From the IMG/VR virus record IMGVR_UViG_3300028920_000001, positions 124,001 to 188,000 of that record: DNA of 64,000 nt, one strand, 5' to 3'. Positions 1,069-36,994 of this stretch are shown piece by piece. Each line of letters starts with the position of its first letter. The first letter of the stretch is position 1. The position numbers and the translations under genes were made by a program. Below the pieces are notes generated by a model. That model did no database searches and was not told the DNA's origin. It saw only the letters and a program-made list of their open reading frames with translations.

Positions 1069-2247
1069 CTAGGCTACTTCAGTTACGATTCCGGCACCAA
1101 CGGTGTGTCCACCCTCTCGAATGGCGAACCGCATGCCAGACTCGATCCCGACAGCCTTTTGCAGGTTGAAGCTTACCTGAGAGTTATCGCCAGGCTTCAC
1201 CATTTGGTTATTCTCGACGGTAATCTCACCAGTCACATCAGTTGTTCCGAAGAAAAACTGCGGACTGTAACCGCTGAAGAATGGAGTGTGACGTCCACCT
1301 TCTTTGGCTTTCAGGATGTAGACCTCAGCTTTGCCTTGAAGATGAGGCTTTACGCTGTTGGGGGCAGTGATGACTTGCCCACGTACAACCTCATCTTTTG
1401 CGACACCACGAAGCAGCAAACCAACATTTAAGCCAGCCTTCGCTTCGGGGATATCCTTGTGGAACATTTGGACTCCGGTGACGACAACCTGGCGAGGCTT
1501 CTGGTCCTCGTCCACCAGTCCCACAATTTCGACCGACTCTCCTTTAGTGAGTGTACCTCGCGATACCCGACCGGTGACCACAGTCCCCCGGCCCGGAATG
1601 CTGTGAGTGTCCTCGATCGGCATGAAGAAGGGAGCAGTGTAGTCCCGTGGAGGCTCAACGATATGCTCGTCGAGGGCCTTCACGAGCTCTACGATGCACT
1701 CTGTGTCTGCACCTAGTGCACCCGCTTCGATGGTCCGAAGCGCCAAGAGGGCGGACCCCTTGACCATGGGAGTACCCTCGTAGCCTTGACTCTCGAGCAT
1801 CTCCTTGGTTTCCATCTCGACCAGCTCCACCAACTCAGCATCAGGAGCTGCATCGATCTTGTTGAGGAAGACCACCATCTGGCTGACCCCAACTTGGCGG
1901 GCCAATAGGATATGCTCTCGAGTCTGTTGCTGCGGACCTTGTGATGCATCCACGAGAAGAATGGCACCATCCATTTGAGAGGCGCCAGTAATCATGTTCT
2001 TCACGTAGTCCGCATGCCCAGGACAATCGATATGGGCGTAGTGGCGCGTTGCAGAGTTATACTCCACATGGGCGGTGTTGATGGTTACGCCCCGCAGTTT
2101 CTCCTCCGGGGCTTTATCGATTTGGTCGAAGTCTACAGGTCTACCGCCGTGAATCGCTGCCATCACCTTCGTGATGGCCGCAGTCAAGGTAGTTTTCCCA
2201 TGATCGACGTGGCCAATCGTTCCGATATTGATGTGCACCGTATTCAT
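1069..2247 (-). CDS. tuf: elongation factor Tu (divergent)
   Basis: [27 protein letters not shown] motifs and domain II/III signatures; start set at MNTVH (2247) after AGGAGA RBS. Confidence 0.97.
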
Positions 2248-2314
2248 GACGGTATCTCCTGTTATCACCTATCCACCATGGATGGGCAAGTCTGTATTTG
2301 ATTGTTGTATTTGA

Positions 2315-3316: not shown

Positions 3317-4558
3317 CTACCCTTTTACACAGATGATTTGCCGAAGTTCATGCTTAATCTCTACTAAATCCTTTTGGGCTTCCATCACTGCATCAATATC
3401 TTTGTACGCACCCGGAGTTTCGTCCAATACATCCTTGTCCTTACGACATTCAATGCCTTCAGTCGCCTGACGATGATCCTTGAGAGTGAATTGCTGTCGT
3501 GCTTGAGTGCGGCTCATCAAACGACCAGCGCCATGTGAAGCACTGGTGAAAGATTCCGGATTCCCAAGACCGCTAACAATGTAACTTCGTGCGCCCATCG
3601 ATCCTGGAATTATGCCGAGCTGTCCCTTTCGAGCTGAAATTGCGCCCTTCCGAGTGACCCAGATATTATGCTTGAAGTGATTTTCTCGAGTCACGTAATT
3701 ATGATGGCAGTTCACCTCTGTAACATCAGCATCAAATTTTGGAACCAGCTTTGATTTCCGAAGAGTTTTGACGATCGTCTCCATCATGAGTTCACGATTG
3801 ACCTGAGCGTAGCGTTGAGCCCATTGAACCGCTTTCATATATTGATCGAAATGCGGCGTTCCTTCCGGAAAGAACGATAAATCCATGTTAGGCAAATCAA
3901 CATAATATTTCTTCATAACATCCTTAGCTAGGCGAATAAAATAAGTACCAATTCGATTCCCGATTCCGCGAGATCCAGAGTGAAGCACAAGCCACACCTG
4001 ATCATTCTTGTCCAGGCACACTTCGATGAAATGATTGCCTGTGCCAAGCGTTCCAAGCTGCTTTTCTGGTCCTTTATGTTCACATGCTGGATTCGATTCT
4101 TTAATCTTTGTGTAACCAGGCTTAAGTTCCTCCCAAGCCACTTCAACTGCTACTGGCGGATTCTCCCATGAACCCGGATCACGTCCTTTAGCAAATCCGT
4201 GTGGAACCGCCTTTTCGATCAAAGCTCGAATTTTAGCCAAATCCTTGAGCATGGGAGCTCGAAGAGTAGTCTGCACGGCCATCATCCCACAACCTATATC
4301 GACCCCGACCGCCGAAGGAACCACTGCATCTTGGGTTGCAATCACGGTGCCGACTGTAGCACCAATCCCAGCATGCACATCCGGCATCACGGCAACATGT
4401 TTGTAAATGAAGGGAAGATCGGCTACGTAAGCAAGTTGGGCCTCAGCATAGTGCTCTACTGGAACACCAACTGTCCATCGCTTGATGAGATGCTTGTATC
4501 CCTTGGTGATTTCAATATTTCCATCGCGGAAAGTGTGTGGAACATTTTGATCAGTCAT
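3317..4558 (-). CDS. rtcB: RtcB family RNA ligase
   Basis: MPDVHAG, VGVDIGCG, LGTLGTGNHFIE, HSGSRG, HN, IIPGSMG, SHGAGR, DETPGAYK motifs. Confidence 0.97.
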   Translation of the reverse strand: MTDQNVPHTFRDGNIEITKGYKHLIKRWTVGVPVEHYAEAQLAYVADLPFIYKHVAVMPDVHAGIGATVGTVIATQDAVVPSAVGVDIGCGMMAVQTTLRAPMLKDLAKIRALIEKAVPHGFAKGRDPGSWENPPVAVEVAWEELKPGYTKIKESNPACEHKGPEKQLGTLGTGNHFIEVCLDKNDQVWLVLHSGSRGIGNRIGTYFIRLAKDVMKKYYVDLPNMDLSFFPEGTPHFDQYMKAVQWAQRYAQVNRELMMETIVKTLRKSKLVPKFDADVTEVNCHHNYVTRENHFKHNIWVTRKGAISARKGQLGIIPGSMGARSYIVSGLGNPESFTSASHGAGRLMSRTQARQQFTLKDHRQATEGIECRKDKDVLDETPGAYKDIDAVMEAQKDLVEIKHELRQIICVKG

Positions 4559-6172: not shown

Positions 6173-6395
6173 GGGTGAGACAGTTTAGTCTCACCCGGAA
6201 ATTCGATATCTACAGAAGAACCTAAGCTGATCTGTAAAAACCGAACTCCAGGTGTCTTGAGGGCCAATAACTTGATTGGCCCTCGGCTACCCGGCATTTA
6301 CAGAGAAAGATAAATTTATCTGCAAAAGCCGAGGCCGAGAGATGGTTCCACCACCCTAGCATCTACTGACTAACCATAACCAGTAGAAGCTAGGG
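6173..6395 (-). ncRNA. structured non-coding RNA candidate (five hairpins)
   Basis: Stems at 6173-6196, 6204-6243, 6259-6284, 6292-6331, 6354-6395 directly 3' of tRNA-Phe. Confidence 0.55.
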
Positions 6396-6404
6396 TAGGT
6401 GTAG

Positions 6405-6477
6405 TGCTCCCGGCCGGAATCGAACCAGCGACGCCGAGCTCTTCAGGCTCGCGCTCTACCAACTGAGCTACAGGAGC
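6405..6477 (-). tRNA. tRNA-Phe(GAA)
   Basis: Cloverleaf; CGAGC-CTGAAGA-GCTCG; 3' A-CTA. Confidence 0.92.
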
Positions 6478-6494
6478 TGGAAAACCTTGACGGG

Positions 6495-6534
6495 CGGTGT
6501 CTATGGAAGAACCGAAGCTGATCCATAGAAACCG
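6495..6534 (-). repeat. 40-nt hairpin motif copy C
   Basis: CGGTTTCTATGGA-N14-TCCATAGACACCG with C(TTCG)G tetraloop; related to 6204, 6292, 13602. Confidence 0.7.
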
Positions 6535-8085: not shown

Positions 8086-8828
8086 TAACCTAGCCGATTT
8101 TGAATAATGGGACGATTAAACCAATTATTATCGTCACTTTTAACTTTTTCAAATTCAGGACGTGATAATTTCATTCTACCAACCACCTTTTCATCATCCT
8201 CGATTCTGATATAAATTCCTTCCATCAAAATTGAATCATCAGTTCCTTCCAACGATTTCAAGTGTTTTTTCCAGTCGGGAGTCTTGAAATTAGAAGGACC
8301 AATGAATTGGGCGAAATTATTCACCTTGCCGAAGATTCCTTGGAAAAGAATCGGTGCAGTTGGTAATTCTGTTAAAGTAAATGCTTGACTGAGCAAAGCA
8401 TGCCGCTTTGGTGTCGAAAGAAACAAGTCATTTTCTTTATCATAAACATCATACTCGACAAAATAGCCAGGTAAAGCATCATAGAAGACACGATGCTTAG
8501 CATAGAGCCACTCACCAAATAAAAGATAACGAGTTCCAAGAATTCGCTCTAAATCAGTCTTTTTGGAATAAGACCATTGTTTGAATAAATTAAATTGGCG
8601 TTCTCTTGGTCCACCAACTAAATAATGGCCTCGACTTTGCAATACTAGCCTATCATCAACTTCGGTTTGAGGAACTTCAAAACTGATTCCAACATTAGCT
8701 CCGTCAAGCTTTTCAGTCACGTATACTTTAAGTTTACCCCATTCTTTATAAATGTCGTCTCGAAGAACTACCTCGAGCCGTTGAGTTTTCGGAAATTTAA
8801 TCATCTTCCTCCATAATATAATCAACAA
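8085..8828 (-). CDS. RNA ligase (Rnl2-like ATP-dependent nucleotidyltransferase)
   Basis: TEKLDGAN (motif I), FGEW, YDVYD, EGIYIR, RMKL; start likely MIKFPK (~8804). Confidence 0.88.
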   Translation of the reverse strand: MLIILWRKMIKFPKTQRLEVVLRDDIYKEWGKLKVYVTEKLDGANVGISFEVPQTEVDDRLVLQSRGHYLVGGPRERQFNLFKQWSYSKKTDLERILGTRYLLFGEWLYAKHRVFYDALPGYFVEYDVYDKENDLFLSTPKRHALLSQAFTLTELPTAPILFQGIFGKVNNFAQFIGPSNFKTPDWKKHLKSLEGTDDSILMEGIYIRIEDDEKVVGRMKLSRPEFEKVKSDDNNWFNRPIIQNRLG

Positions 8829-12977: not shown

Positions 12978-13270
12978 ACCAAAAGATCTGGTTCTAAATC
13001 AGAATCTAATCTACTGGACCAGCCCATCAAGCGACTATCTAGATAATCTCCACCGCCTTGTTCATATACCCTAATTTTAGCTTGATAGCCTACTTTAGGT
13101 AAGTGGCTAATACGATCTCCATAGACTCGATACTGACCCTCCATAGTAATCACGTCCGCTGTAACCCAGTCAAGAGTGTCTATATCTTTGAAATTTATTA
13201 TGATCCCTCGTAATTCTTGATACCTTCCAACTCTATCAGCTGGATATTCAAGATTAGGATCAAAAATCAT
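12956..13270 (-). CDS. hypothetical protein, C-terminal motif
   Basis: Ends LVWLVMEI*. Confidence 0.75.
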   Translation of the reverse strand: MIFDPNLEYPADRVGRYQELRGIIINFKDIDTLDWVTADVITMEGQYRVYGDRISHLPKVGYQAKIRVYEQGGGDYLDSRLMGWSSRLDSDLEPDLLVWLVMEI

Positions 13271-13479
13271 TATTCCTCCATAAATCTAGCTATCTGACCA
13301 AGTATACATTCTTCTTCAGTGTGAAATCTTGAAATCACGAAACAACCACAATAAATGCATTCCGATAGATATTTAGTCGTTTCAGGTCCGAGAATTCCAT
13401 CGGGTTTAATACCAACTTTATGCTGATATCCTGCAGTTATTCCTGCTCTTACATCATCTAAATAAGTAACATAACTCAC
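13270..13479 (-). CDS. small protein with peptidoglycan-binding-like segment, C-terminal motif
   Basis: YQHKVGIKPDGILGPET resembles PG-binding repeat; CIYC; ends QIARFMEE*; start moved out of tRNA-like gene to GTG 13479. Confidence 0.6.
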   Translation of the reverse strand: MSYVTYLDDVRAGITAGYQHKVGIKPDGILGPETTKYLSECIYCGCFVISRFHTEEECILGQIARFMEE

Positions 13480-13496
13480 GATTGAATTTACATTAG

Positions 13497-13682
13497 TACC
13501 CCGGACGGGAATCGAACCCGCTCCGCACCCGTGGTAGGGCACAACCCGTGGCCTTCAAGGCGATCAACTCTCTATCTCCAGCGGGCAAAGACCACGCTAT
13601 CCGACATTTACAGGTGAACTCGAGCTCATCTGTAAAAGCCGTTTAACCTGACCTAAAGCTCTGACCGTTAAGCTACCGAGGT
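13497..13682 (-). ncRNA. tRNA-like RNA with ~125-nt structured insertion replacing the anticodon loop
   Basis: Acceptor ACCTCGG/CCGGGGT-A, D-arm GCTT-AACGGTCA-GAGC, T-arm GCGGG-TTCGATT-CCCGT; 186 nt. Confidence 0.75.
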
Positions 13683-13685
13683 ATT

Positions 13686-13761
13686 TGGCACCCCACAGGA
13701 GACTTGAACTCCTATCTTGTGATCGAGAATCACAAATCCTGAGCCATTAGACGAGTGGGGC
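13686..13761 (-). tRNA. tRNA-Glu(CTC)
   Basis: Cloverleaf; TGTGA-TTCTCGA-TCACA; encoded CCA. Confidence 0.92.
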
Positions 13762-13776
13762 ATTGTAAAATCTTGT

Positions 13777-14133
13777 ATGTATGATCTTCGTATTCAAGTA
13801 ACTTTAAAAAGAACAGGTGAAAAACCCAAAACTAGAACTTTCAAAGGAAATAGCGCTAAAAGATTAACTGAGGTTTTGAAAGAAATCGTAGATAATGAAG
13901 ATAAACTTCAATCTGATCCTGATCGACTAAAATCATGGCGAGATGGACATAAATTCAAAAAATTGAAGGAAATTGGAGAAAAAGAATACTACCAGTGTCG
14001 ACAGTGCCAAGCCGAAGTAAATTTCCCTAAGAACTTTAATGATTTCCAAAGACGATTGACTTTAGCATTTCATCATATGCGTACTTGTGCGGAGTGGATG
14101 AGTTCAACCGTAAGTAAAGTGATGGAAAGCTGA
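13777..14133 (+). CDS. hypothetical protein, C-terminal motif
   Basis: CRQC...HxxxC; ends TVSKVMES*. Confidence 0.8.
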   Translation: MYDLRIQVTLKRTGEKPKTRTFKGNSAKRLTEVLKEIVDNEDKLQSDPDRLKSWRDGHKFKKLKEIGEKEYYQCRQCQAEVNFPKNFNDFQRRLTLAFHHMRTCAEWMSSTVSKVMES

Positions 14134-24007: not shown

Positions 24008-24796
24008 TCATATTGTATATATACTTGAATAAATAACACCTTTTTTAGCGAAACCAAGAAATCCATCATCTTTCGCCCGTTTTTCAAATTCCTCATTCAC
24101 ATTATCTTGATAATGAGTTAACAACATCTTAGCTTTAATTTCATCTGGCAAAGTTTTAAGCTGGTCATAATGGGCATGAACACCCGATTGATAAGGAGCC
24201 GTTTCACAATCATGAATAATCAAATCAGCTTCCTGATAAAAAGCCTTCATTGAAGTCTCTGGTGCAAACTGAACATCGGTCGTAATATAAATTCGCTTAC
24301 CGCTATCCGGGTCTGTGAACATCAGTCCGTAAGAATCAACTAAGGTATATTTAGCAGTGATATGAACAGATTGCACTAAGAAGAATTCAATTCCTTCCCA
24401 AATAAAGGATTCATCTTTCCAGATCACGGGAGCATCAAAATACGTCTCGAGAGTGGCATCCACACCCTGAAGTCCTTCAAGTCCACCTTTTAAAGTGTGG
24501 TCCCATAAATCAAGTAACAATTGCCGTTCAGCAAAAAACTTCGGCTTACCCTGGTATCGAGGATCAAAATAACTCCCAAAAGCCAGCCATTCCACACCGC
24601 CACAATGATCAGCATGGGCATGGGAAATATAAACTGCGTCAATATCTAAATAAGTGAGTCCAGCTTCTTTGACAGAGAACCGAGCATCAGTGCCGCAGTC
24701 CACCATCATGTTTTTACCGTTTCGCTTAATAAGATAATTGGTCTGAAAATTATTTAAACAAAAAGCACTTCCGGTTCCAAGGGCGTAGATTTCCAT
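24008..24796 (-). CDS. metallo-beta-lactamase fold hydrolase (RNase Z-like)
   Basis: LGTGSA, VDCG, SHAHADH, TTD, IHDC, H, THY motifs. Confidence 0.9.
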   Translation of the reverse strand: MEIYALGTGSAFCLNNFQTNYLIKRNGKNMMVDCGTDARFSVKEAGLTYLDIDAVYISHAHADHCGGVEWLAFGSYFDPRYQGKPKFFAERQLLLDLWDHTLKGGLEGLQGVDATLETYFDAPVIWKDESFIWEGIEFFLVQSVHITAKYTLVDSYGLMFTDPDSGKRIYITTDVQFAPETSMKAFYQEADLIIHDCETAPYQSGVHAHYDQLKTLPDEIKAKMLLTHYQDNVNEEFEKRAKDDGFLGFAKKGVIYSSIYTI

Positions 24797-35908: not shown

Positions 35909-36994
35909 ATGATAAATTTAATAGGTCAGAAATTCAATAAACTCACTATTCTGGAAAGACATGGGAGTACTCAGCAACAAAAAGCACTCTGGAGATGTCG
36001 TTGTGATTGTGGAAATATAGTTATTACCACAACTGGAGTTCTCAAATCTGGTAAAACTAAATCATGTGGCTGTCTTCGTAAAATTACTGCACAAAGATTG
36101 GGTTTATCAAGAAGAAAAATTAATTATAATAACATTCAATGTCACATTTGTGGTAAAAGTTTATCCTATCGGTTTCTTAATTCAGACGGGTCATTAAAAA
36201 GGCCACTTTGTGAAAAGAAAATTAATAGTTTAGTTTGTAAACCATGTCACAAACTAATTTCTAAAAAGAATGGTCATAAAGTTGCAGATTTAAATTCTAA
36301 TATTCCAATCTCAAATCTTCAAATAGAAATTATATTAGGATCAATTTTAGGCGACGGACATTTAGAAAAAAGCCCAGCCGGAAAATTATCTAATTATGGC
36401 CTCTCTGTAAAACATGGACTACAACAAGAAAAATACTGTTTATGGAAAGCTTCATTACTGGGTGATTTAATCACTAAAATCGATTATCCACGCAATAGAA
36501 TTAGATTTAGAACTAAGAAACACAAATTAATTAGAAACATTGCGAAACAATTTATGGTGAATGGGAGAAAAACCATCACTTATGATGCCATTAAAAACAT
36601 CGGACCCATAGGTCTTTTGATTTGGTATTTAGATGACGGAAGCTTACTTCCATATCGAATTAGTAAAAAAGGCAAAACTCGAAAGCCTGAAATTAGATTT
36701 TCTACCAATTGTTTCACAGACGAAGAAAATCTAATTATTCGTAAGGTGCTTAAGGAAAGAATGGATATTGAATCGACCAAGTGCAGCTGGAAAGCTACCA
36801 GAAATTTTAGAGGAGAAAAATTAAAAGAGCCAAAACGCTATTATGGTATTCGACTTTATGGGAAAAATGCTGAAAAATTTATAGATTTTGTACGACCTCA
36901 TGCTGATTTAAATAAATCAGGAATGGCTTACAAATTCGACCTTACCCTTAGAGGTCCACTTGATAACAAGCACACAAGACCACGAATAAACTAG
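35909..36994 (+). mobile_element. free-standing LAGLIDADG homing endonuclease gene
   Basis: ILGSILGDGHL and LLIWYLDDGS motifs; N-terminal WRCRCDCG...SCGC module; AT-rich, opposite strand. Confidence 0.88.

What the first reader, a model, noticed from the sequence alone, without database searches (positions are those of the whole stretch)
13497..13682. tRNA whose anticodon loop is replaced by a ~125-nt multibranched domain
Seen: the acceptor, D-arm (with GG) and T-arm are canonical, but the gene is 186 nt long. The anticodon stem (TAGG/CCTA, extendable by CA/TG) opens into a junction holding the 40-nt repeat hairpin (13602-13641) and a CGTGGTC/GGCCACG stem. No anticodon can be assembled by simple excision, the insert is shorter than typical group I introns, and I see no clear P7 or bulge-helix-bulge. 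Inference: a tRNA-mimic ncRNA (for example an EF-Tu ligand, or a decoy for anticodon nucleases or T-box and uncharged-tRNA sensors), or a novel intron ligated by the phage's own RtcB/Rnl2.
Basis: partly seen in the sequence, partly recalled or inferred. Interest (0 to 1): 0.75.

Follow-up and report, generated by a model that had tools for sequence, protein, structure and literature searches.

The report
tRNA-shaped Y RNA relative in megaphage
The 186-nt "overlong tRNA" is real and is most likely a rearranged member of a family of tRNA-bodied Y RNAs (partners of the Ro60/Rsr RNA-quality-control protein) that this 427-kb phage encodes; these RNAs keep normal tRNA ends, unlike the described bacterial Y RNA YrlA.

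Summary
The gene exists at window 13497-13682 on the minus strand. It has a 7-bp acceptor stem, a D arm and a T arm, and starts 3 nt after the CCA of tRNA-Glu(CUC). It matches no Rfam family.

The window is part of a 426,960-bp phage that encodes a full Ro60/Rsr protein, RtcB, an Rnl2-like ligase and EF-Tu. All on the tRNA strand, the phage carries at least three free Y-RNA hairpins, four clear RNAs with a Y module (three are elongated tRNAs with it on the 5' side of the anticodon arm), and one partial copy.

The same tRNA-topology chimeras sit beside Rsr genes in other phages, with strong covariation. A module-only model hits only Rsr loci.

X shares UCUUUGCCCG and GGAGAUA..GUUGAUCGCC with these modules (1 of 3000 random genome segments score as high). 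But X lacks one strand of the Ro-type hairpin, and the profile and covariance models miss its module. X also holds a copy of a 4-member hairpin repeat.

Removing two segments (61 and 31 nt) leaves a canonical class II tRNA-Ser(UGA).

Best reading (0.5): a tRNA-scaffolded Y-like ncRNA. Rivals: a spliced tRNA-Ser, or a decaying gene. Expression and Rsr binding are untested.

The parts
13497..13682 (-). X: the whole 186-nt tRNA-shaped gene. RNA nt 1 = window 13682; the discriminator A = window 13497.
   Evidence: ARAGORN -i; sequence; CM R1 scores 25.2 bits over exactly this span.
13676..13682 (-). Acceptor stem, 5' strand ACCUCGG. It pairs with 13498-13504 (CCGGGGU).
13658..13673 (-). D arm GCUU-AACGGUCA-GAGC.
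13596..13641 (-). Copy of a 4-member hairpin repeat (CGGCUUUUACAGAUGAGCUCGAGUUCACCUGUAAAUGUCGGAUAGC). It lies inside the 61-nt insertion between nt 26 and the anticodon stem.
   Evidence: blastn and nhmmer within the genome; consensus fold of 16 pairs, 5 of them compensatory.
13591..13595 (-). GUGGU, candidate 5' strand of the anticodon stem. It pairs with GCCAC at 13548-13552.
13582..13591 (-). UCUUUGCCCG, the U-rich strand of the Ro-type helix. Identical to the one in element D and near-identical to those in C, Y2 and Y3.
13559..13581 (-). CUGGAGAUAGAGAGUUGAUCGCC, a remnant of the Y-RNA 5'-type strand (GNCGAA-like motif plus YUAY/GGUUAUCGCC motif). The CGGGC strand of the hairpin is missing.
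   Evidence: Pairwise alignments to Y3 (27 of 34 identical), C and Y1. Not detected by the HMM or by CM R2.
13553..13559 (-). CUUGAAG, a 7-nt anticodon-like loop (U33, UGA, A37).
13525..13542 (-). GUGCCC-UACCAC-GGGUGC, a long variable-arm-like hairpin. It overlaps ACGGGUGCGGAG (13521-13532), which resembles the Y 5'-strand motif with one extra base.
13505..13521 (-). T arm GCGGG-UUCGAUU-CCCGU.
   Evidence: (partial matches).
13686..13761 (-). tRNA-Glu(CUC). Its CCA end lies 3 nt upstream of X, so the two are probably co-transcribed.
3317..4558 (-). RtcB RNA ligase.
   Evidence: Pfam PF01139, 420.8 bits.
8190..8729 (-). Rnl2-type RNA ligase domain.
   Evidence: PF09414, 105.4 bits.
6204..6534 (-). 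The three other copies of the hairpin repeat (6204-6243, 6291-6331, 6495-6534), in the spacers around tRNA-Phe and tRNA-Glu(UUC).

Best explanation
X is a tRNA-scaffolded, Y-RNA-related noncoding RNA. It is a divergent, rearranged member of a family in which a Ro60/Rsr-type Y-RNA module is grafted onto the 5' side of the anticodon arm of an otherwise ordinary tRNA.

Shown:
- The phage encodes a complete Ro60/Rsr (TROVE plus vWA domains), RtcB and an Rnl2-like ligase.
- It carries free Y-RNA hairpins (Y1, Y2, Y3), four RNAs with a clear module (B, C, D, A2) and one partial copy (Y4), all on the strand of the tRNA array.
- The same chimeras lie next to Rsr genes in unrelated phages, with covariation across the acceptor stem that proves the tRNA topology.
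- X has intact tRNA arms and shares module sequence with this family.

Inferred:
- X is cut out of the tRNA-array transcript by RNase P and 3' processing, and folds into the tRNA L-shape.
- Its extra domain then recruits, or once recruited, the phage Rsr ring. The tRNA body would let the RNP engage tRNA-handling factors such as RtcB, PNPase or the CCA enzyme, for tRNA and RNA quality control or repair during infection. This is by analogy with YrlA and with the Thermus phage Ro60-Yrl-PNPase complex.
- In X the module is partly deleted, and a repeat hairpin has been added, so binding to Rsr may be weakened or remodelled.
For: - Rsr: TROVE 146.7 bits plus vWA_Ro60 210.4 bits in a 593-aa ORF at genome about 97.9-99.7 kb.
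- Y1, B and A2 lie 1.7-2.1 kb downstream of Rsr on the same strand. Y2 and C are at 112.5-112.9 kb. Y3 was found de novo by an HMM, E = 7e-5. D is at 123.3 kb.
- Rfam YrlA gives sub-threshold hits (41 bits, E = 1e-5) to homologous arrays in L095 and L061. The L061 array abuts a Ro60 ORF.
- CM R1 finds 122-129-nt chimeras beside Rsr in L210, L222, L238 and L229, plus a 95-nt one in L228. Across 12 sequences 97.4% of cells are paired, 24 of 26 pairs change on both sides, and 0 of 500 shuffles reach this.
- Module-only CM R2: 10 hits in 0.38 Mb that is mostly Rsr-flanking DNA, and 0 in 1.3 Mb of RtcB-only loci.
- X against the modules: 1 of 3000 random genome segments reach its summed score, and 15 of 3000 reach its best single score. 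The match to the Y3 5' strand is 27 of 34 identical and collinear.
- Published biology: YrlA binds Rsr, mimics tRNA, and in M. smegmatis is cut by RNase P and given CCA (PMC4201824). A phage Ro60 binds phage Y-like RNAs and host PNPase (PMC12135203).
Against: - X's module fails every profile test. The 5'-strand HMM does not list it at E <= 100. CM R2 with filters off finds nothing in X. The module part reaches only 2.9 bits with R1.
- X lacks the CGGG(C/U) strand of the hairpin next to GCCCG.
- X lies about 38 kb from Rsr, outside the 4-kb rule used for YrlA.
- No exact GNCGAA motif is present.
- No orthologue of X was found, so nothing shows that its odd parts are conserved.
- No RNA data are available.
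Confidence: 0.5

Rival explanations
1. X is an interrupted tRNA-Ser(UGA) gene. The two inserted segments (61 nt between nt 26 and 27, and 31 nt between the anticodon stem and loop) are removed at the RNA level, and the exons are joined by the phage RtcB or Rnl2-like ligase. The product is a decoding tRNA.
For: - Removing RNA nt 27-87 and 93-123 gives a product that default ARAGORN calls tRNA-Ser(UGA), with a long variable arm.
- The default ARAGORN list for the genome has no tRNA-Ser, Cys or Tyr.
- Across the family, 8 of 16 members can re-form a perfect 5-bp anticodon stem with a 7-nt loop, against 5.75% in shuffles. The insertion point varies from 26/27 to 31/32, as it would for an intron.
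- RtcB and an Rnl2-like ligase sit in the same tRNA array.
- The phage does use an intron-containing tRNA: a group I intron, RF00028 at 65 bits.
- Wang et al. raised the possibility that YrlA is processed towards tRNA (10.1101/312249).
Against: - No tRNA splicing endonuclease is present (PF01974: no hit).
- No known ribozyme or intron family matches X at E <= 10.
- Two separate excisions are needed.
- The discriminator is A. From my own knowledge, unchecked here, the E. coli and T4 tRNA-Ser have G73.
- The D arm is class I-like.
- Family members D, L228 and L229_2 have no anticodon arm. C has A33. L222 and L238_1 have a GCU anticodon without a long variable arm. The module is therefore not generally an intron of a decoding tRNA.
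- The same module exists as free-standing Y RNAs.
Confidence: 0.2
2. X is a decaying gene with no function of its own: a tRNA-Ser or Y-tRNA chimera that suffered a partial deletion of its Y module and the insertion of a mobile or duplicated hairpin repeat.
For: - One strand of the Ro-type hairpin is missing, and the profile models fail.
- A repeat that otherwise lies only in intergenic spacers sits inside the gene.
- CCACGGGU is duplicated.
- No orthologue is known.
- Fold z-score is only -2.62.
Against: - All four tRNA helices are intact: the acceptor stem, D arm, T arm and the GUGGU/GCCAC stem.
- The loops are canonical, and a 6-7-bp variable arm is present.
- The gene keeps normal tRNA-array spacing, 3 nt after the upstream CCA.
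- The hairpin repeat is itself under structural constraint.
Confidence: 0.22
3. X is a self-splicing or self-cleaving RNA of a known class (group I intron or small ribozyme), or a tmRNA-like molecule.
For: It lies in a tRNA. The phage has a true group I intron in another tRNA.
Against: - Rfam at E <= 10 gives no intron, ribozyme or tmRNA match beyond noise.
- ARAGORN tmRNA mode finds nothing.
- The inserts, 61 and 31 nt (106 nt in ARAGORN's model), are far below group I size.
Confidence: 0.03

Closest known systems
YrlA (Rfam RF02553), the bacterial and phage Y RNA with a tRNA-like domain that is bound by Rsr/Ro60 (Chen et al. 2014, PMC4201824; Wang et al. 2018, 10.1101/312249)
   Same: - D and T arms of tRNA type.
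- A Ro-type module with a GNCGAA-like 5'-strand motif and a YUAY/GGUUAUC motif.
- Genomic association with Rsr and RtcB, and presence in phages.
[quoted passage not shown]
   Different: - YrlA is circularly permuted: its ends lie in the Ro stem, its acceptor stem is closed by a loop, and its T arm comes before its D arm.
- B, C, D and X have the normal tRNA order and open acceptor ends. Their Ro helix is capped by a small loop inside the anticodon arm.
- X additionally lacks one strand of that helix, lies 38 kb from Rsr, and gets no RF02553 hit.
D. radiodurans Yrn1 and the YrlB-type simple Y RNAs
   Same: - Y2 of this phage has the Yrn1-like layout: the Ro stem at the termini, with D arm, anticodon arm and T arm inside.
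- Y1 and Y3 are simple hairpin Y RNAs like YrlB.
- These show that the module shared with X is a Y-RNA module.
   Different: X is neither layout. Its termini form a tRNA acceptor stem.
"Enigmatic introns" in tRNA genes of Lak megaphages (Devoto et al. 2019, PMC6784885)
   Same: Overlong tRNA genes in huge phages that match no Rfam family, found only with intron-tolerant tRNA finders.
   Different: The Lak inserts were not linked to Ro60 or Y RNA. No sequence comparison with them was made here.
Group I intron-containing tRNAs (RF00028)
   Same: An insert in the anticodon region of a phage tRNA. One true case is in this genome, at 194717-195065.
   Different: X has no group I core and no Rfam match. 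Its inserts are 31 and 61 nt.
Archaeal and algal BHB-intron and permuted tRNA genes
   Same: Inserts at non-canonical positions in the anticodon stem, with RtcB as the joining enzyme.
   Different: The phage has no splicing endonuclease. It carries a tmRNA, which points to a bacterial host. The BHB motif itself was not tested.

Membership tests
tRNA (RF00005) | Cloverleaf with a 7-bp acceptor stem, D arm and T arm with conserved loop bases. | tested here: met
   All three helices and the GG and UUCGAUU loops are present.
tRNA (RF00005) | Contiguous 5-bp anticodon stem with a 7-nt loop; total length 70-95 nt; reaches the Rfam gathering score. | tested here: not met
   No RF00005 hit at E <= 10, and default ARAGORN misses it. 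The stem and loop form only after 31 nt are left out.
YrlA / bacterial Y RNA (RF02553) | Reaches the Rfam model score. | tested here: not met
   No RF02553 match in window 13300-13900 at E <= 10. Relatives in L095 and L061 reach 35-41 bits against a gathering score of 69.
YrlA / bacterial Y RNA (RF02553) | Encoded within about 4 kb of Ro60/Rsr on the same strand (Chen et al. 2014). | tested here: not met
   Same strand, but X is about 38 kb from Rsr. B, Y1 and A2 meet the rule.
YrlA / bacterial Y RNA (RF02553) | GNCGAA(N0-1)G motif in the Ro-binding strand. | tested here: inconclusive
   The phage's own Y RNAs carry G(U/C)CGGAG. X has GCUGGAG and GUGCGGAG, each one change away. The HMM of this strand does not list X.
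YrlA / bacterial Y RNA (RF02553) | Permuted topology: RNA ends in the Ro stem, and the acceptor stem closed by a loop. | tested here: not met
   X, B, C and D have open acceptor ends about 95-185 nt apart. Covariation of this stem in 12 relatives.
YrlA / bacterial Y RNA (RF02553) | Bound by Rsr/Ro60 in vivo. | not testable with these tools
   No RNA or RIP data; no RNA run was listed.
tRNA-topology Y-tRNA chimeras (the family defined here: B, C, D, L210 x3, L222, L238 x3, L229, L228, L103) | Capped Ro-type hairpin (U-rich GCCCG, loop, CGGGYCG) followed by GGUUAUC on the 5' side of the anticodon arm. | tested here: not met
   CM R2 with filters off finds nothing in X. X keeps UCUUUGCCCG and GUUGAUCGCC but lacks the CGGGY strand.
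tRNA-topology Y-tRNA chimeras (the family defined here) | Sequence similarity of the insert to the modules beyond chance. | tested here: met
   Summed local scores are reached by 1 of 3000 random genome segments. Against C, z = 3.9; against Y1, z = 3.4.
Group I intron (RF00028) | P3-P9 catalytic core; Rfam score. | tested here: not met
   No match. Positive control in the same genome: 65 bits.
Archaeal-type protein-spliced tRNA intron | A splicing endonuclease (EndA) is available. | tested here: not met
   PF01974 is absent from the complete genome, and the control genomes score positive. The host genome is unknown.
tmRNA | tRNA-like domain plus a tag reading frame. | tested here: not met
   ARAGORN -m finds nothing in X. 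The phage's tmRNA is elsewhere, at genome 75832-76185.

The most novel reading that the evidence does not exclude
The Y modules in these phage tRNAs, X's included, are a new kind of tRNA intervening sequence. Rsr recognises the module, an unknown nuclease or the RNA itself cuts at its base, and RtcB seals the exons. Ro60, Y RNA and RtcB would then form a bacterial and phage tRNA splicing or licensing system, and YrlA would be its permuted derivative. That would explain why rsr, yrlA and rtcB travel together, and would account for some of the "enigmatic introns" of huge phages.
Probability: 0.12. Interest if true: 0.9.

Novelty: new variant of a known kind. Interest (0 to 1): 0.6.

Why it matters
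Y RNAs with tRNA-like domains (YrlA) are known only as circularly permuted tRNA mimics. Their origin, their partner and the reason they travel with RtcB are all open questions.

This phage and several others encode the non-permuted form. These are real tRNA genes, often with an intact anticodon stem-loop, that carry the Ro-type module as an extra arm. They occur both beside Rsr and scattered through the tRNA array.

If this holds, it would:
- supply the missing intermediate for the tRNA origin of YrlA;
- give a concrete substrate for testing whether Rsr, Y RNA and RtcB act on or through tRNA-shaped RNAs;
- offer an identity for some unexplained "introns" in huge-phage tRNAs;
- warn annotators that overlong phage tRNAs may be Y RNAs rather than intron-containing tRNAs.

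X itself shows how far such a chimera can be remodelled while keeping a complete tRNA frame.

Tried and rejected
- Known RNA families for X: none match.
- Phage GenBank blastn with 600 nt: no match.
- A splicing "rule" with a fixed insertion point at 29/30: abandoned. The insertion point varies from 26/27 to 31/32, and in many members the anticodon hairpin is local.
- Loose motif scan of IMG/VR: 118 matches, of which only 6 passed my context filter and 5 proved true family members. Stricter scans found only L020, L080 and L103.
- X-specific pattern in IMG/VR: 0 hits.
- Neighbouring DUF488 protein as a synteny anchor: no relatives.
- blastn of X against five huge phage genomes: only T-arm fragments.
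- RtcB-anchored loci (80 loci, 1.3 Mb): no Y modules by regex or by R2.
- CM R1 does not discriminate, because ordinary tRNAs score 30-60 bits by skipping the module. Only its long hits were used.
- R2 on five huge Rsr or RtcB phages: only weak hits.
- RNA-seq evidence: one DNA run (marine sediment) holds the locus fully, and no RNA run was listed.
- Two review papers on bacterial Y RNAs were not held. I could not check whether the non-permuted form has been described there.
- Complex prediction and structure tools were not used, since they give no verdict for protein-RNA pairs.

Full report
**1. The observation**

Window 13497-13682 holds, on the minus strand, a 186-nt gene that starts 3 nt after the CCA of tRNA-Glu(CUC). 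Its parts are:
- an acceptor stem ACCUCGG/CCGGGGU;
- a D arm GCUU-AACGGUCA-GAGC;
- a T arm GCGGG-UUCGAUU-CCCGU;
- discriminator A.

Default ARAGORN and Rfam do not see it, either at gathering thresholds or at E <= 10. ARAGORN with introns calls a weak tRNA-Thr(UGU).

The MFE fold is -74.4 kcal/mol, z = -2.62. Forcing UAGG/CCUA costs about 10 kcal/mol. Single-sequence folding therefore does not settle the interior.

**2. The genome**

The window is bases 124001-188000 of a 426,960-bp IMG/VR phage with terminal repeats. The only run holding the locus fully is a marine sediment metagenome.

The phage encodes 37 tRNAs and a tmRNA by default ARAGORN, with no Ser, Cys or Tyr. It also encodes:
- EF-Tu (window 1069-2268);
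- RtcB (window 3317-4558);
- an Rnl2-type ligase (window 8190-8729);
- a 593-aa Ro60/Rsr protein with TROVE and Ro60-vWA domains, at genome about 97.9-99.7 kb.

One tRNA gene, at genome 194717-195065, holds a true group I intron (RF00028, 65 bits).

**3. Paralogues**

Intron-tolerant ARAGORN flags three more overlong tRNA genes on the same strand:
- B, 95979-96105;
- C, 112507-112633;
- D, 123258-123354.

All three carry U-rich GCCCG, a small loop, then CGGG(C/U)CG(G/U)AG .. GGAU .. GGUUAUCG on the 5' side of the anticodon arm.

The same two strands also occur as free-standing hairpin RNAs, with the helix at the termini:
- Y1 (about 96110-96185), directly upstream of B and 1.7 kb downstream of Rsr;
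- Y3 (about 118880-118945), found de novo by an HMM trained on the others, E = 7e-5;
- Y2 (about 112750-112880), where the terminal helix encloses a D arm, an anticodon arm and a T arm.

A2 (95822-95934) has the module plus a long hairpin. A partial copy, Y4, follows D.

**4. Identity of the module**

- In locus L061 an array of these units runs into an ORF that I read, from memory of Ro60 sequences, as Ro60-like (LGTDGGTYY motif; no domain search was run).
- Rfam YrlA gives sub-threshold hits there and in L095: 41 bits, E = 1e-5, against a gathering score of 69.
- The motifs correspond to the GNCGAA(N0-1)G and YUAY motifs that Chen et al. describe for YrlA (PMC4201824).
- A covariance model of tRNA plus module (R1) finds 122-129-nt genes within 1.5 kb of Rsr, on its strand, in independent phage contigs L210 (three genes), L222, L238 (three) and L229. 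It also finds a 95-nt one in L228. L210 is the contig of L020, and its Rsr is 51% identical to this phage's.
- On 12 sequences, 97.4% of cells pair, 24 of 26 pairs change on both sides, and 0 of 500 shuffles reach this. The acceptor stem that spans the whole gene is 100% paired, with double changes in all 7 pairs.
- A module-only model (R2) gives 10 hits in 0.38 Mb that is mostly Rsr-flanking DNA, and none in 1.3 Mb around RtcB genes that lack Rsr.
- A 359-kb Rsr phage (G007) has such genes scattered in its tRNA array, about 90 kb from its Rsr. It also has other overlong tRNAs of 115-177 nt.

The family is therefore real, is Rsr-associated, and has tRNA topology. That is the non-permuted counterpart of YrlA, which the literature I could read describes as a circularly permuted tRNA mimic (10.1101/312249).

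**5. Where X fits**

X shares several features with the modules:
- UCUUUGCCCG, identical to D;
- CUGGAGAUAGAGAGUUGAUCGCCUUG, collinear with the Y3 5' strand, 27 of 34 identical;
- a second motif, ACGGGUGCGGAG, just 5' of the T arm.

Against 3000 random segments of the same genome, X's summed alignment score to the modules is reached once, and its best single score 15 times.

X nevertheless lacks the CGGG(C/U) strand next to GCCCG. The 5'-strand HMM does not list it, R2 with filters off finds nothing, and the module part scores 2.9 bits with R1.

GCCCG could instead pair with either of two downstream CGGGU copies. Pairing with the first copy is the MFE itself, -74.4; pairing with the second gives -69.6. 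Nothing tests this.

Between nt 26 and the anticodon stem, X also holds a 46-nt copy of a hairpin repeat. The other three copies lie in spacers around tRNA-Phe and tRNA-Glu(UUC). The repeat's fold has 5 compensatory pairs out of 16.

**6. A tRNA underneath**

Leaving out RNA nt 27-87 and 93-123 gives a 94-nt RNA. Default ARAGORN calls it tRNA-Ser(UGA) (95 nt as it delimits the gene), with stem GUGGU/GCCAC, loop CUUGAAG and a long variable arm.

In the family, 8 of 16 members can re-form a perfect 5-bp stem with a 7-nt loop, against 5.75% of shuffles. Their anticodons differ.

Other features argue against decoding:
- the insertion point varies from 26/27 to 31/32;
- in many members the hairpin is simply local;
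- C has A33;
- some members carry a GCU anticodon without a long arm;
- D, L228 and L229_2 have no anticodon arm at all.

The anticodon arm therefore looks inherited from tRNA ancestors, and corresponds to the "V" stem-loop of YrlA. It is not evidence that all members decode.

**7. Mechanism**

Most likely (0.5), X is a tRNA-framed Y-like RNA. It would be processed like a tRNA, and its extra domain would serve, or once served, to bind the phage Rsr ring. The tRNA body would address the RNP to tRNA-handling proteins.

This rests on analogy:
- YrlA binds Rsr and is modified by TruB and DusA. In M. smegmatis it is cut by RNase P and given CCA (PMC4201824).
- A Thermus phage Ro60 binds phage Y-like RNAs and host PNPase, and damps its activity (PMC12135203).
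- rsr, Y RNA and rtcB form an RNA-repair operon induced by damaged tRNAs (PMC7790460).

None of this was tested for X.

Rivals:
- RNA-level removal of both inserts to give tRNA-Ser(UGA) (0.2). RtcB and Rnl2 are present, but there is no EndA and no ribozyme match.
- A decaying gene (0.22).
- A known intron, ribozyme or tmRNA class (0.03).

**8. Limits**

No orthologue of X was found, and no RNA data. The conservation, expression and Rsr binding of X are all unknown.

Two reviews on bacterial Y RNAs were not available. The claim that the non-permuted form is undescribed rests on the papers I could read.

Noticed in passing
Genome 194717-195065 (+), outside the window; locus L005:318-666: A class II tRNA (ARAGORN: Ser-CGA) interrupted by a true group I intron (RF00028, 65 bits, E = 2.9e-15).
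   Followed up: partly
Window 6204-6243, 6291-6331, 6495-6534 and 13601-13641 (all minus strand): A four-copy family of roughly 41-nt hairpins (CGGYUUU..GAUCAGCUUNGGUUCUUC..). The consensus fold has 16 pairs, 5 of them compensatory. Three copies sit in tRNA spacers and one inside X. Function unknown: processing site, protein-binding site or small mobile element.
   Followed up: partly
Genome 95822-96186, 112748-112882, 118878-118946 and 123150-123253 (minus strand), outside the window: Free-standing Y-like RNAs: Y1, Y3 (simple hairpins), Y2 (terminal Ro helix enclosing D, anticodon and T arms), A2 and a partial Y4. None reaches any Rfam family.
   Followed up: partly
Window 1069-2268 (-): A phage-encoded EF-Tu with all three domains (196.8, 68.1 and 106.9 bits), at the edge of the tRNA array.
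   Followed up: no
Window 24008-24796 (-): Homologue of the anti-Pycsar protein Apyc1 (PF23023, 115.8 bits), a counter-defence phosphodiesterase.
   Followed up: no
Window 35909-36994 (+): LAGLIDADG homing endonuclease ORF (PF03161, 86.1 bits) on the strand opposite to most genes. Whether it sits in an intron or intein was not checked.
   Followed up: no
Genome 109783-113049 (minus strand), outside the window: Five tRNA-Leu genes of only 75-76 nt, so without the long variable arm expected of bacterial tRNA-Leu. Also a tRNA with anticodon UCA called SeC (genome 80541-80615), and a tmRNA (genome 75832-76185).
   Followed up: no
L242-L244 (G007, a 359-kb phage): 138447-138623 and 147933-148091: Other odd overlong tRNAs. 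One (177 nt) has an insertion of about 100 nt in the D loop. One (159 nt) has a second T-arm-containing tRNA-like unit nested in its variable region.
   Followed up: no
Window 13270-13542 (-): A 90-aa GTG-started ORF overlaps the 3' end of X. Its start is probably further downstream, or the ORF is spurious.
   Followed up: no
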